Shown here: in pieces, positions 23-17,492 of the stretch
Layout of the letters: the number at the start of each line of letters is the position of its first letter
How positions within the stretch are numbered: position 1 is the stretch's first letter
From: Sminthopsis crassicaudata
Taxonomy: Eukaryota
Length of the DNA stretch: 64,000 nucleotides
Assembly (NCBI RefSeq): GCF_048593235.1
Contig: NC_133619.1
Span: 637,648,558-637,712,557, forward strand
Reading direction: 5' to 3'
Position numbers and translations under genes: made by a program
Notes under the pieces: generated by a model
Told to the model about the DNA's origin: nothing
The model's database searches: none
What the model saw: the letters and a program-made list of their open reading frames with translations, nothing else

Positions 23-3336
<3,314 letters not shown>

Positions 3337-4099
3337 CTTCTGGGTTTTTAGGTCAGACTGGAGGGAGAGGGTCTGAGTCAGGGCCAAGGGCTCCCCACCC
3401 CTCTCATTTCTCACACCAAGAGGGCCCCCAGGGGGCCAATCCTCACGCCCCCTCTGCTCCCATTACCCACAAACCCCCAGTTTCTGCCTCCAAACACACA
3501 AAGGAGCCATTGAGGACCGCCCTGCCCCCCCCATACACAACTCCTCTTCCCCCAGGCTCGAGGCGCACCCCTCCCATTCTGAGCTCTGAGTTCCAAATGC
3601 AATACAGCAGCCAGACACAGTGAGAGCAAAAATAAACACAAAGTAACCCCAATATGTGGGGGAGGGGTGTTGACAACTGGGCCAATCAGCAAAGGCTGTC
3701 CAGAAGGGGGAGGGGAGCCTTTGGGGGTCCCAAACTGGGGTTGATTAATCAAGGTGAAAAGGACCGGGGACCCTACGATAGGGGGGTTGGGTCAAGGGTG
3801 CATCCCCTCCAGGGGGGGGAGGGGCCATGCCCCCCCAGTTCCCCTTCTTCCCAGGGACCCTCCTGGGCCGGCATCCTGCCTCACACGCCCGCCCCCCTGC
3901 ACACACACACACACCAGGGCCACAGGCCGTGACAGCCGCCCCCCCACACACACACAAACTGCACACACTTGCTCTTCCTGTGGCCTTCCTCTGGCCGCTC
4001 CCCATCGCATCCTAACAGCCCCCCCTCCCGTCCTCGGGGATCCCTAGTACTCGTCTCCTCCCCACACACGCTCGCGGAGCCTCCCCTGACACACTCGCC

Positions 4100-10169: not shown

Positions 10170-10400
10170 CCCAAGCCATCTTCCGGGGTTCAAATCTGGC
10201 CCTGGCACTAAATAGTTGTGTGACCAGGGCAAGCCACTTCAGTTTTCACATCTGTAAAAAGAGCTCTCCACCCAGTCCCACCCAGTCTTAGTAGTGTCAG
10301 TTCCCAAAACTCAGGGACAATGTTTTTTTTCCTATCTGCATTCCCAGGGCTTAGTACTTAGAGTGAGGCACTTAGTAGGTGCTTAATACATATTTATTCA
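10170..10400 (+). mobile_element. MIR / L2 3'-end remnants
   Basis: TTCAAATCTGGC...GTGTGACCAGGGCAAG...CATCTGTAAAA followed by CACTTAGTAGGTGCTTAATA. Confidence 0.65.
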
Positions 10401-11962
10401 TGGAATGACAAGGTTAGAAAGTGTAATGATTCTAAGAGCAATTAGATGGAATCACCATCCATCTGGGTAGAGACCCGGACTCTGGACAGGGACTCCACCT
10501 TTGGAACCTGGTACTGGGGAGGATGGCATGACCTTTCCAGGCTACCTTCAGGGGCATCTGGCAAAAGTACTAGGACATGACAGTGACTAGCTACTTATGT
10601 GAACTGGTTGTCTCCTCCCTGTCGGGCAAGGATTGATCAAGGTAAACATCCACAGTGGGTTCTAGAAGGGCGGCCCTTGGGGCTCCTTTATGTCCCAGCA
10701 CAGGGCTTGGCACTTCAGACAGGGGCAAGGGCAGGTGACCCTTCCTCCACCTCCTTCCTTACTGCTCATTGCTATCCTAGGGCCCCTTGATCTGGCCTCT
10801 CCAAAGTATCAGAGACAGCCCCTAAAACTGGGTGGCCCCATCAGTCTTGCTCCTCTCTCCACCACACATGTAAGGCAGAGTCCCATCCTCCCCACCCCCA
10901 AAAGTCTTGGGCAATAATTCCAGGATCCTGGTGACTTTTGTCCCCTGTGAACAGTGTTTTGAAACTGGTCAATTTGGAAGAATAATAATAACTAGGAGGA
11001 AAAATAATTGCTTTGCGGTCATTTAAACTGTGGAATCAGGGGGGGGGGCGTCCAGACAACTTGTGTGGGCCTCAGAAATGCTTTATAAGATCCCCTAAAT
11101 GTGATTGAACCGTTCCTCTTTCCACGTGTCTATGTTTGCTGGGTCAGTCACAGTTAGGCCCGGCCTCCAACCAGAGTCCAGGAGGCAGGACGGGAGGAAC
11201 CACCCATGGGTGGTAACCTTAGCCAAGGCCCGGGAGAAGGCAGCCCCTCAAGGACGGTCACAGGAGGACTTGCCCAGGGTCCCTCAGCTGATCCCAGAAG
11301 CTCAGCCTTCTTTCCACTCCAACACGATGGCTTTGAAGGACGAGGGGGTGGGATGTGGACAGGGAGAGTGAAGTTAGCGGGGGTCATTCTAGGAGGAGGG
11401 AAGCTGAGGCCGGGAACCCTGGCACCCTCTTTGGGGAGGTAAGAGGTGCTCGGGGCTGGAGCGAAGAGATGGGACCAGAAAGGATCGAGGGCAAAGGAGG
11501 GTCTCGGGAGTTAACAGGTGATCACTCCTTATGAACACTTAAGTGCCAACTCAGTGCCTCACCAAGCGCTGGGGGCTTGTGAAGAGCGGGCAGAAAGGGG
11601 CACTGGGGAATCCTAGACCGAAGGTGGAAGGAAAGGGCGATGGCAGTCACAGACAGGGCCGGGCTCTGACCTCAAGCCCACTCCTCCTTCTCCCATGGGA
11701 AGGAGCCCCTGGCACCTGAGCTCCTACTCAGGCCCTCCCTGTAGGGATGGGTCTTCCCTAGTTCCTCCCCACCCTCAGGCCTACTGGCATTCCAGATGTA
11801 GAAGTGGTAAGGGGGGCTTCTAGAGCCCAAAGGCAAGGGCGGAGGTAAAAATTCGGTGTCAAGACTGGATTAAGGGAGCCCTTTCCTCCCCACCCTCCTT
11901 CCCTGAGGGATACCTGGGGCCTCTCCTGGGATCTGGAGGGCGGGTACCTTGGCCATCGCCCC

Positions 11963-12911
11963 TCACCCAGCCTGATGGGCTCCAGCACAGGCAGCCTGCA
12001 GTAACTCCAGAAGTTTGGCCAAGAATTGGGGGACAGGCCTCTCAGGGTGTCCTTCGCAGATGGGGCAGGGCCCCGAGACAGCTCCCCCCCTGACTCCCCA
12101 CAGGTGGGGCCCCAGGGCTTTCAAGGAGCGCTGCAGCCGGCTCACGATCCTCCCTGTCAGCGGAGCCTCCTCGTAGCCAATCACAGACAGCTCCAGGACA
12201 AAGCAGTGCAGACTCTCCATGGGGCACACCTACAGAGACCGCATTTCCATCCTGCCCTGGGGCTCCCCGGGCACAGAACTGGACCCAGTCCCAGCCCCTG
12301 GCATTCCCCGGCTTGACGTGCCATTGCGGGCCCACTGCCTCCGTCCTGCCCTGCGGGAGCCCTGGCAGAGATGCCCTAAACTCCATCCCTGGAAGAACGG
12401 AGGCTAATGGAGACTAACCACACCCCCCAAGGGGTCCTGCCAGGGCGCGAGCAGCGGCTCCTCAAAATGCGCCCCCAAGACCCAAACCGCCAACTTGAGG
12501 CACGCCCCCTCCCCAGAGGGAAATCCAAGGGGAGCGGCTGGGGGGGCACTTGCCTCAGGTCCGGGCCGGCAGGTTTGCCCCTGACTTTCTCCTCCCCTCC
12601 AAACAGCAAAGAGAAGCACGGCCCCCTCGGGACCGGCTGGTAAGGAGAGTGTACTCACAGAGAGGCTGTCCGGAGTATAAAGGGTCCCATCATTTCCACT
12701 GCCCTGGGATTGGAGGGGCAAGAGCTGGCCACCGGAATGCCCAGGCTTCTTTGCCAACGTGCCCTGCCGACCCGTGCCCACCACCCCACCCCCCCAGCCT
12801 GCCACTCACTAGGGCCTCCATGAGAGCTACAAGTCCCTCGAAGGGCTCCCAAGGGCAGCTGGGGCCCCCCGCGGAGTGGGTCAACACAAGCAAGGCCCAG
12901 AAGAGCCACAT
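11963..12911 (-). CDS. IL15L: Interleukin-15-like cytokine (IL-15L), intact 137-aa ORF in three coding exons
   Basis: Exons 12911-12810 (102 nt, CTA|GTGAGT), 12703-12659 (45 nt, CCCAG| and TCT|GTGAGT) and 12229-11963 (267 nt, CTGTAG|, ends TGA); both introns phase 0. Protein: MWLFWALLVLTHSAGGPSCPWEPFEGLVALMEALGSGNDGTLYTPDSLSVCPMESLHCFVLELSVIGYEEAPLTGRIVSRLQRSLKALGPHLWGVRGGAVSGPCPICEGHPERPVPQFLAKLLELLQAACAGAHQAG. It has a signal peptide and IL-15 motifs DxTLYT, CFxLELxVI, CxxCE and FL...Q. Position between SUPT5H and RPS16 matches the recalled IL15L locus. Confidence 0.93.
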
Positions 12912-13979
12912 GGGCGGCGGCGGTGAGGGGAGGGCCGCTGGGACCCATCTCCCTGGCCTGCGGAGCGGAGACTCAGGCGCCTGCAGGAGACAGATGGTGG
13001 GAGGGGCAGGGGTTAGAGTGCAGGGGGGAAGGGCAGCGTTCTGAGTGCTGTGCACAGAAACCCCAGAACCCAAACTTTGGGGAGGCTCCCAGTGCCCTCC
13101 CAGCCTGGGGGTGGGGGAGGGGGCCCAGCCCCCCCCCATGCAGGCTGCCCCATGTTGGCACTGACTTAGGCAGCGGGGAGCACTTCCTCCCCAGCGGGAG
13201 CACTTGCCTGCCTCAGTTTCCTCCTTTCACGGAGGGGGGGGTCCTACTCGTGCAGTGCTTTGCAAACCTTCCCGCGGGCCGACTCTCTGGATCTGGGGCC
13301 TCTGTCAGGAGCGGGTCTCCCGAGGCAGGAGCGGGGCCCGCGCGGGCCCCTTTCTCTCCCCTCCCCCCATCACTCACTCATCCTTCATCTAGGGGGATCC
13401 TCTGCTCGGCTTCAGCTAGGAGTGACCCGAGGGAGCTTTCTGGCTGGACTGGGAGGCGGCCCCTTCCCCTCCGGCCGGGCAGCCAGAGAAGGTAAAGTGC
13501 CAGAGGTCTTCGGGGTGTCGGGACACATGGACACGCCCCCTCCTACCTTTGACCTCCCCGGGGAGAAGGGGAAGCTGGGGAAACTGAGGTGGCTCAAAGG
13601 AAGAGGGGCCCCTCCCCCAACTGAGCAACAGGGATGGGAAGGGCTGGCTTCCGGGGGGGGGCTGGGGGCTTGCGGAGAGTTTGGGGAGAAGGGTCTGGGG
13701 TGGACCCGAGGATCTCCACAAGAGAGGAGATGAAGGAAGAAGGAGAAGCTTAAAGTGGAGAGGGTCCGGAGGGGGAGGGGCCTGGGAGGGTTGGAGGGGG
13801 TCTCGGGAGGAGAATCTGGAGGCAGAACTCTTGGGGTTGGGGGCGGGTCGGAGGTCGGGGGGGGGTAAAGGAATCTTCACGGGGGAAGTTGGGGAGAGGA
13901 AAGAGAGACAGGCAGGAGTCTGGAGAGAGATGGGAGTCTGGGAGGAAGGGCCAGGATTGGAAAGGTAGGGGGCGGGCTC

Positions 13980-14329
13980 AAGAGGTGACCATGTAAATGA
14001 CAGGAGACTCAGCCAATAAGGACCGACATCACTTCCTGCGGCTGGGTTATTGGTCTCTCCCTCGTACAGAAAGGCTCTGCTCCGCCCCTACCGTAAAGTG
14101 CCACCGTCGTACTTCCAAGGTCCAGCCCTCTTTCTCCGCCGAGCGGCTTTACAGAGCGTCTGCGCCTGCGCAAACTCTGGAAAACAGCCCTCGCATCGCC
14201 GCCCGTTCCTTTCGTGCTTCGGCGCCGCGCGGGTGAGGAGCTCACGTCTTCGGCTTCTGTCGCCGCCGCCGCCGCCGCCGCCTCCGCCACCTCCATCTCT
14301 GCTCTGCGCCCGCGTCGCCAATCAACAGC
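13980..14329. promoter_or_regulatory. RPS16 CpG promoter and 5'UTR, probably bidirectional
   Basis: CCAAT at 14013, ATTGG at 14049, ETS ACTTCC at 14031 and 14111, NRF1-like TGCGCCTGCGCA at 14161-14172. TOP-like TTCCTTTC at 14206-14213 is followed by GGCGCCGCGCGGGTGAGG, as in recalled human RPS16 5'UTR. Confidence 0.8.

Positions 14330-17492
<3,163 letters not shown>

What the first reader, a model, noticed from the sequence alone, without database searches (positions are those of the whole stretch)
11963..12911. Hidden intact interleukin-15-like (IL-15L) cytokine gene between SUPT5H and RPS16
Seen: three minus-strand exons (12911-12810, 12703-12659, 12229-11963) with canonical splice sites and phase-0 introns join into a stop-free 137-aa ORF with a hydrophobic signal peptide. 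It matches human IL-15 motifs: DGTLYT vs DATLYT, HCFVLELSVIGYE vs KCFLLELQVISLE, CPICE vs CKECE, QFLAKLLELLQ vs EFLQSFVHIVQ. Known (recalled from Dijkstra et al. 2014, Immunogenetics): IL-15L is the third IL-2/IL-15 family member, lies at this locus, is intact in some mammals such as cattle, and is incapacitated in human and mouse. Inferred: this marsupial keeps a probably functional copy that annotation pipelines could miss, because it is short, GC-rich and has no human ortholog. I cannot tell whether this species' copy has been reported.
Basis: partly seen in the sequence, partly recalled or inferred. Interest (0 to 1): 0.95.

Follow-up and report, generated by a model that had tools for sequence, protein, structure and literature searches.

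The report
Dunnart IL-15-like cytokine gene, already annotated
This is a real, intact and transcribed interleukin-15-like (IL-15L) cytokine gene in a dasyurid marsupial, but it is ordinary: the exact protein is already a (nameless) RefSeq model and intact IL-15L in marsupials was published in 2013.

Summary
Three minus-strand exons (12911-12810, 12703-12659, 12229-11963) with GT/AG borders join into a 137-aa ORF. It is the IL-15L ortholog. It passes Pfam IL15's gathering score and is 61% identical to the rabbit protein its source names "interleukin 15-like precursor", against about 25% to human IL-15. It carries every IL-15L motif of Dijkstra et al., including the extra N/C-terminal cysteine pair and the fused exon 3/4. 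It lies between SUPT5H and RPS16. Its model is a confident four-helix bundle whose nine best PDB matches are all IL-15. Its gene tree follows the species tree. RNA contigs show the exon 2-3 junction and a 5'UTR intron. dN/dS against Tasmanian devil and bilby is 0.30-0.48.

It is not hidden. The product is identical to RefSeq XP_074162930.1 ("uncharacterized protein LOC141564392", Sminthopsis crassicaudata). Bilby and tammar wallaby orthologs are already named "interleukin-15-like". Dijkstra et al. (2013) reported intact IL-15L in marsupials. What remains is a name for an unnamed locus. The likely mechanism, an IL-15Ralpha-dependent cytokine, is inferred from cattle and trout work. No function of IL-15L has been shown in any mammal.

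The parts
12810..12911 (-). IL-15L coding exon 1: start codon, hydrophobic leader, C19 and helix A (34 codons)
   Evidence: GT donor follows. Poor Kozak context CCGCCCATGT.
12659..12703 (-). IL-15L coding exon 2 (15 codons, GSGNDGTLYTPDSLS): A-B loop with the LxTP motif and Y43
   Evidence: AG acceptor and GT donor. RNA joint 12229>12659. Skipped in a second RNA form (joint 12229>12810).
11963..12229 (-). IL-15L coding exon '3/4' (88 codons plus TGA): helices B, C and D, four family cysteines and C130
   Evidence: A single exon where the family consensus has two, as Dijkstra et al. describe for tetrapod IL-15L.
12912..12980 (-). 5'UTR part of the first coding exon, with an out-of-frame uATG at -37
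   Evidence: RNA joint 12980>13378 in X5 and X13. uATG analysis.
12981..13377 (-). 5'UTR intron. When retained, an in-frame ATG at 13139 gives the 213-aa isoform X1.
   Evidence: CT..AC on + = GT..AG on -..
13378..13865 (-). Upstream non-coding exon (5' end not determined) carrying three more uATGs
   Evidence: Contigs X5 #16 and X13 #6..
11300..11962 (-). 3'UTR, covered at exon-like depth. It holds an optional intron 11331-11913. The nearest AATAAA on this strand is at about 10393-10398.
   Evidence: Depth table and joint 11914>11330 in X5 and X6. PolyA-signal scan.
14330..14377 (+). Neighbour: RPS16 coding exon 1 ([16 protein letters not shown]), head-to-head with IL-15L inside a CpG island
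   Evidence: Loose end at 14377 running into RPS16 exon 2 sequence.
15664..17489 (+). Neighbour: remaining RPS16 coding exons
   Evidence: Pfam Ribosomal_S9 E = 6.7e-11 and 9.3e-6.
2380..3462 (-). Neighbour: first coding exons of SUPT5H ([14 protein letters not shown]... and the acidic stretch ...[19 protein letters not shown]), downstream of IL-15L on the same strand
   Evidence: Recognised from established knowledge of SPT5's N-terminus. Pfam found no family in the acidic exon.

Best explanation
The locus is the dasyurid marsupial ortholog of interleukin-15-like (IL-15L), the third member of the IL-2/IL-15 family. The species is almost certainly the fat-tailed dunnart, Sminthopsis crassicaudata. 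The gene is intact, transcribed, spliced and under purifying selection. Shown here: a 137-aa precursor with a hydrophobic leader, a predicted short-chain four-helix bundle, three cysteine pairs, no N-glycosylation sequon, and conservation of the residues that in IL-15 contact IL-15Ralpha (Y43, E62, V65, E69) and gamma-c (Q127). Inferred from work on bovine and trout IL-15L: the protein is made at low level from an mRNA with a uAUG-laden 5'UTR and a weak start context. It needs IL-15Ralpha as a chaperone and presenting chain to leave the cell. It would then signal as an IL-15L/IL-15Ralpha complex through a gamma-c-containing receptor to STAT5. Which beta-type chain it uses and which cells respond are unknown for any mammal.
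For: Gene structure and ORF. Product identical to RefSeq XP_074162930.1. Pfam IL15 30.8 bits against a cut-off of 28.5. 61% identity to rabbit 'interleukin 15-like precursor' against 25 bits and about 25% to human IL-15. A profile of the marsupial proteins retrieves IL-15L of eutherians, platypus, turtles, squamates, gar, bowfin, teleosts and a shark ahead of any IL-15-type protein. The gene tree matches the species tree inside an amniote IL-15L clade with 99/98 support. AlphaFold2 model pLDDT 82.5, pTM 0.77, helices 22-34, 52-69, 72-92 and 115-136 plus two short strands. The nine best PDB matches are all IL-15, target TM 0.67-0.76, and the 16 best Swiss-Prot models are all IL-15. All motif residues of Dijkstra et al. 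are present and conserved. Synteny SUPT5H / IL-15L / RPS16 is repeated in devil and bilby for the RPS16 side. Spliced RNA contigs come from several studies. dN/dS is 0.30, 0.39 and 0.48, with Fisher p = 1.8e-5, 6.9e-5 and 5e-3. Variants seen in RNA contigs cause no stop or frameshift. Binding of bovine IL-15L to IL-15Ralpha and trout IL-15L function: PMC3894449 and PMC7658486.
Against: There is no protein-level evidence. The start codon context is poor and four uATGs precede it. Introns are covered in the RNA contigs, and an exon-2-skipped form had the higher contig depth in the one run that showed both (9.6 against 4.5). The exon 1-exon 2 joint was not listed. By my alignment register the positions matching IL-15's IL-2Rbeta hot spots D8 and N65 are G26 and S84, so IL-15-like signalling through IL-2Rbeta is not assured. 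Yamaguchi et al. could detect IL-15L function only in trout, not cattle. dN/dS of 0.3-0.5 is only moderate constraint, weaker than the roughly 0.19 (ds/dn 5.3) reported for eutherian IL-15L.
Confidence: 0.92

Rival explanations
1. A transcribed but effectively non-coding or decaying IL-15L locus. Transcription would be a by-product of the adjacent RPS16 CpG-island promoter, translation would be blocked by uORFs and a weak start, and the open frame would be a remnant not yet hit by mutations.
For: Head-to-head layout with RPS16 exon 1 and a CpG island at 14000-14600. Four uATGs and a poor Kozak context. Intron coverage and a prominent exon-2-skipped form. IL-15L was lost repeatedly in eutherians. 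No mammalian function has been found.
Against: dN/dS is significantly below 1 in all three marsupial pairs. All six cysteines and all receptor-contact motifs are conserved from shark and bony fish to marsupials. The ORF is intact in dunnart, devil and bilby and in the platypus protein model. uAUG-rich 5'UTRs are a known trait of functional IL-15 and IL-15L. Coding variants in the RNA contigs include no disabling change.
Confidence: 0.06
2. It is IL-15 proper or another gamma-c cytokine (IL-2, IL-21) rather than IL-15L.
For: The Pfam family hit is 'IL15', and the closest solved structures are IL-15. No IL-15L structure turned up in the PDB searches.
Against: About 25% identity to IL-15 against 61% to rabbit IL-15L. 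The locus is SUPT5H/RPS16, the IL-15L locus. It has the IL-15L-specific extra cysteine pair C19/C130 and the fused exon 3/4. An IL-15-type protein with the long leader falls outside the clade.
Confidence: 0.01
3. A chance open reading frame in GC-rich DNA.
For: The region is GC-rich (CDS 63% GC, GC3 71%), which favours long stop-free stretches. Many overlapping spurious ORFs are seen nearby.
Against: Homologs at E down to 1e-83, spliced transcripts, a confident fold and conserved synteny.
Confidence: 0.005

Closest known systems
Mammalian and reptilian IL-15L as defined by Dijkstra et al. 2013/2014 (Immunogenetics 66:93; PMC3894449), e.g. rabbit NP_001288189 and cattle NP_001288142
   Same: Same locus next to SUPT5H. 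Same three coding exons with a fused exon 3/4. 61% identity to the rabbit protein. Same six cysteines, LYTP motif, F, E, E, E and Q positions. No N-glycosylation sequon, as in the bovine protein. uAUG-rich 5'UTR and weak start context.
   Different: Marsupial-specific details only. There are three or four extra residues in the C-D loop (WGVRGGAVSG against W-VTGQG). The dunnart has a leader region 3-5 residues shorter than in devil, bilby and opossum. It has 'EPFEGL' in helix A where eutherians have 'EPFYFL'.
Marsupial IL-15L records already public: Sminthopsis crassicaudata XP_074162930.1 (uncharacterized LOC141564392), Sarcophilus harrisii A0A7N4P9I0, Macrotis lagotis and Notamacropus eugenii 'interleukin-15-like', and the opossum, wallaby and devil sequences in Fig. 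S2 of PMC3894449
   Same: The first is identical to the window's product. Devil is 82% and bilby 76% identical, with the same exon structure and the same head-to-head RPS16 neighbour.
   Different: Nothing for the first, other than its lack of a name. The opossum and wombat UniProt models miss the true exon 2.
Interleukin-15 (human and mouse; PDB 2Z3Q, 2PSM, 4GS7)
   Same: Same fold (TM 0.67-0.76). Two shared disulfide pairs. Shared IL-15Ralpha contact residues (Y26, E46, V49, E53 = Y43, E62, V65, E69) and the gamma-c glutamine (Q108 = Q127).
   Different: About 25% identity, a different chromosome locus and no long IL-15-type leader. It has an extra N/C-terminal cysteine pair and has lost one intron. 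The equivalents of the IL-2Rbeta contacts D8 and N65 are not conserved (G26, S84, by my alignment register).
Teleost IL-15L (trout IL-15La/b; Yamaguchi et al. 2020, PMC7658486)
   Same: Ortholog by synteny and profile similarity. Shares the IL-15Ralpha-binding motifs.
   Different: 25-31% identity. Most fish sequences lack the C-terminal extra cysteine. Function (pSTAT5 in double-negative thymocytes, induction of IL-4/13) has been shown only in trout.

Membership tests
IL-15L (Dijkstra et al. 2013) | Gene lies at the PLEKHG2-SUPT5H locus | tested here: met
   SUPT5H first coding exons at about 2380-3462 (-), downstream on the same strand. RPS16 at 14330-17489 (+) on the other side. PLEKHG2 itself was not looked for. 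Criterion.
IL-15L (Dijkstra et al. 2013) | Tetrapod form has lost the intron between family exons 3 and 4 (single 'exon 3/4') | tested here: met
   Helices B to D are encoded by one 267-bp exon, 12229-11963. Same in devil and bilby.
IL-15L (Dijkstra et al. 2013) | Leader peptide plus four alpha-helices A-D of a short-chain helical cytokine | tested here: met
   AlphaFold2: helix 2-13 (low-confidence leader), then helices 22-34, 52-69, 72-92 and 115-136, and strands 41-43 and 112-114. pLDDT 82.5. Best PDB matches are IL-15. The signal-peptide cleavage site was not predicted with a dedicated tool.
IL-15L (Dijkstra et al. 2013) | Two family cysteine pairs, LxTP motif, F44, D/E89, Q108 | tested here: met
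   C51/C104 and C58/C107 align with IL-15 C35/C85 and C42/C88. L42-Y43-T44-P45, F59, E108 and Q127 are present and conserved. Disulfide bonding itself is not testable here.
IL-15L (Dijkstra et al. 2013) | [quoted passage not shown] | tested here: met
   C19 and C130 are present. Both are invariant in all 19 mammalian and reptilian sequences compared.
IL-15L (Dijkstra et al. 2013) | IL-15Ralpha key residues Y28, E47, D/E54 | tested here: met
   Y43, E62 and E69 align with IL-15 Y26, E46 and E53.
IL-15L (Dijkstra et al. 2013) | Physical binding to IL-15Ralpha and dependence on it for surface display and secretion | not testable with these tools
   Shown only for bovine and trout proteins.
IL-15L (Dijkstra et al. 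2013) | Closer to named IL-15L than to IL-15, IL-2 or IL-21 | tested here: met
   61% identity to rabbit IL-15L. 37% over 93 residues to an IL-15-type protein. About 25% to human IL-15. Tree. Only two putative IL-15-type sequences and no IL-2 were in the tree.
Pfam PF02372 (IL15) | Whole-protein score at or above the gathering cut-off of 28.5 bits | tested here: met
   30.8 bits, E = 3.6e-7, residues 39-127 on profile positions 38-124 of 128. Exon 3 alone scores 22.5 bits.
Interleukin-15 proper | Orthology to IL-15: IL-15 locus, long leader, separate exons 3 and 4, high identity to IL-15 | tested here: not met
   The locus is SUPT5H/RPS16. The leader is short. Exon 3/4 is fused. Identity is about 25%.

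The most novel reading that the evidence does not exclude
Marsupial IL-15L may not act like IL-15. By my alignment register, the positions matching IL-15's IL-2Rbeta contacts (D8, N65) are G26 and S84. A prominent transcript skips exon 2 and so removes the loop carrying Y43. If real at the protein level, the full-length form could pair IL-15Ralpha with a receptor other than IL-2Rbeta, and the short form could be a regulatory or decoy product. The fat-tailed dunnart is bred in laboratories (my own knowledge, not checked here), so this locus could serve to find the still unknown mammalian function of IL-15L.
Probability: 0.1. Interest if true: 0.5.

Novelty: already known. Interest (0 to 1): 0.12.

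Why it matters
It matters little as a discovery. IL-15L in marsupials has been in the literature since 2013, and this exact protein is in RefSeq. Two small practical points remain. First, LOC141564392 could be renamed IL15L, and several ortholog records are misnamed or mis-modelled: wombat 'Interleukin-23 subunit alpha', Prolemur 'Interleukin-13', and opossum and wombat models lacking exon 2. Second, no function of IL-15L is known in any mammal, and an intact, expressed and constrained copy in a small marsupial offers one place to test it.

Tried and rejected

Pfam on exon 3 alone fell below the cut-off (22.5 bits). The full-length protein was needed to pass.

The look-up of encoding contigs found no record for the wallaby (P0010) or wombat (P0007) proteins. 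dN/dS therefore rests on three species only.

My first greedy exon finder misplaced the exon 2/3 border by one GTG codon. This was corrected.

Pfam found no family in the acidic SUPT5H exon. That neighbour is identified from its recognisable N-terminal sequence only.

I ran no further search on collecting IL-15 and IL-2 sequences for a fuller family tree. Synteny, identity and motifs already settle orthology.

The chance-ORF and IL-15-proper readings were considered and rejected (see rival explanations).

The exon 1-exon 2 RNA joint could not be shown. Read laying is capped at one call and works on assembler contigs here.

Full report
**Observation.** On the minus strand, 12911-12810, 12703-12659 and 12229-11963 translate to 34, 15 and 88 residues without internal stops and end in TGA. 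GT follows exons 1 and 2, AG precedes exons 2 and 3, and both introns are phase 0. The joined coding sequence is 414 nt, 63% GC with GC3 of 71%.

**Not hidden.** A database search with exon 3 returned a 137-aa NCBI protein, [quoted passage not shown]. A script showed that the window's spliced product is identical to it. It carries three RefSeq accessions (XP_074162930/31/32). A 213-aa isoform X1 starts at an in-frame ATG at 13139 inside the unspliced 5' region. The window therefore comes from the fat-tailed dunnart or something indistinguishable from it at this locus. The annotation pipeline found the gene and only failed to name it.

**Prior art.**
- Dijkstra et al. (Immunogenetics 2013/14, PMC3894449) placed IL-15L between PLEKHG2 and SUPT5H in reptiles and mammals.
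- They noted that tetrapods fused exons 3 and 4.
- Their Fig. S2 shows opossum and tammar wallaby sequences and lists a Tasmanian devil accession.
- Yamaguchi et al. 2020 (PMC7658486) list a bandicoot IL-15L transcript.
- A profile search found bilby and tammar wallaby proteins already named "interleukin-15-like", pig and rabbit "interleukin 15-like", and devil, wombat, opossum and platypus entries.
- In the held literature I found no mention of IL-15L in a dunnart. A 2026 review of marsupial immunity lists only IL6 for that species.

**Identity.**
- The full-length protein scores 30.8 bits on Pfam IL15, above the gathering cut-off of 28.5.
- It is 61% identical to the rabbit protein named "interleukin 15-like precursor". 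Against human IL-15 it scores 25 bits at about 25% identity.
- A profile of three marsupial proteins, scored against 1.8 billion representatives, gave 53 hits. Those whose names I looked up are IL-15L of turtles, squamates, gar, bowfin, paddlefish, teleosts and a shark. One chimaera entry is labelled IL-15. A protein with an IL-15-type long leader appears only at E = 6e-4.
- A maximum-likelihood tree gives (platypus, ((bilby, (window, devil)), eutherians)) inside an amniote clade with 99/98 support. The IL-15-type protein falls outside.
- Synteny agrees. SUPT5H lies downstream on the same strand. RPS16 lies head-to-head upstream, as in devil and bilby.

**Motifs.** Dijkstra's criteria are. All of them are present and conserved:
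- the two family cysteine pairs, C51/C104 and C58/C107;
- the IL-15L-specific pair, C19/C130;
- L42-Y43-T44-P45, F59, E62, E69, E108 and Q127.

There is no N-glycosylation sequon, as in bovine IL-15L.

**Fold.** AlphaFold2 on a 33-sequence alignment gave pLDDT 82.5 and pTM 0.77. The model has a low-confidence leader helix, helices 22-34, 52-69, 72-92 and 115-136, and two short strands in the crossover loops. The nine best Foldseek PDB matches are all IL-15 (probability 1.0, target TM 0.67-0.76), followed at a distance by IL-4, IL-21, IL-9 and IL-2. The 16 best Swiss-Prot models are all IL-15. A sequence profile hits IL-15 chains at 6e-16 and IL-21 at 1e-10.

**Expression.** Assembler contigs of four RNA runs from four studies were laid on 11300-15300. 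Each joint below has GT..AG ends on the minus strand.

| Joint | Reading | Runs |
|---|---|---|
| 12229>12659 | exon 3 to exon 2 | X5 |
| 12229>12810 | exon 2 skipped | X5 |
| 12980>13378 | 5'UTR intron | X5, X13 |
| 11914>11330 | 49 nt past the stop codon | X5, X6 |

- The exon 1-exon 2 joint was not listed.
- Introns are also covered, so unspliced RNA or DNA is present.
- These are contigs, so depths are only indicative.
- The exon-2-skipped form also exists as a devil annotation (P0002).
- The supported 5'UTR has four uATGs and the start context is weak. Both are published traits of IL-15L and IL-15.
- Coding variants in the contigs are H134Y, H57R, A14T and two silent changes. None is disabling.

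**Selection.** I extracted the devil and bilby coding sequences, which have the same three exons and splice signals. Nei-Gojobori dN/dS is 0.30 (dunnart-devil), 0.39 (devil-bilby) and 0.48 (dunnart-bilby). Fisher p values for an excess of synonymous change are 1.8e-5, 6.9e-5 and 5e-3. This is real but moderate constraint, weaker than the ds/dn of 5.3 reported for eutherians.

**Mechanism.** Shown here: the gene is intact, spliced and constrained, and it encodes an IL-15-fold protein with the IL-15Ralpha and gamma-c contact residues. Inferred from bovine and trout experiments: secretion and surface display depend on IL-15Ralpha, and signalling leads to STAT5. One caveat applies. By my alignment register the equivalents of IL-15 D8 and N65, the IL-2Rbeta contacts, are G26 and S84. 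In addition, Yamaguchi et al. could detect IL-15L function only in trout, not cattle.

**Verdict.** The claim of a hidden gene is wrong. Novelty is minimal: a name for an unnamed RefSeq locus.

Noticed in passing
window 13378-14600: The IL-15L upstream non-coding exon (13378 to at least 13865, minus strand) and RPS16 exon 1 (ATG about 14330, donor after 14377, plus strand) are head-to-head within a few hundred bases. A CpG island lies between them (CpG o/e 0.9-1.3 at 14000-14400). This is probably a shared bidirectional promoter, which could explain the broad low-level and partly unspliced IL-15L transcription. Devil (L001) and bilby (L002) have the same layout.
   Followed up: partly
window 11330-11914 (minus strand): An RNA joint 11914>11330 with GT..AG ends lies 49 nt downstream of the stop codon, in two runs from different studies. 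It is either an optional 3'UTR intron or the start of read-through towards SUPT5H. A human IL-15L-pseudogene/SUPT5H hybrid cDNA is described in PMC3894449.
   Followed up: no
window 12229/12810 joint; Sarcophilus P0002: An exon-2-skipping transcript removes GSGNDGTLYTPDSLS, including Y43 of the IL-15Ralpha-binding motif. In run X5 its contig depth (9.6) exceeded that of the exon-2-containing joint (4.5). The same 125-aa isoform is annotated in Tasmanian devil. The A-B crossover loop would be very short, so a folded cytokine seems unlikely.
   Followed up: partly
window 12912-13865 (minus strand): There are four upstream ATGs in the RNA-supported 5'UTR. Two of their uORFs run past the main ATG out of frame. 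The main ATG sits in the context CCGCCCATGT (C at -3, T at +4). Retention of the 5'UTR intron exposes an in-frame ATG at 13139, which gives the annotated 213-aa isoform X1 with a proline-rich, non-leader N-terminus.
   Followed up: partly
ortholog records P0004, P0007, P0034: Some public records of IL-15L orthologs are misnamed or mis-modelled. Wombat A0A4X2M8I3 is called 'Interleukin-23 subunit alpha' and Prolemur A0A8C9AQ22 'Interleukin-13'. The opossum (A0A5F8HBX9) and wombat models replace the true exon 2 with a short unrelated stretch.
   Followed up: no
window 12978-13206: A joint seen in one run (X5) has non-canonical ends (GC..TT on the plus strand, 6 ambiguous letters). It may be an alternative 5'UTR splice or an assembly artefact. 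It remains unexplained.
   Followed up: no
   Followed up: no
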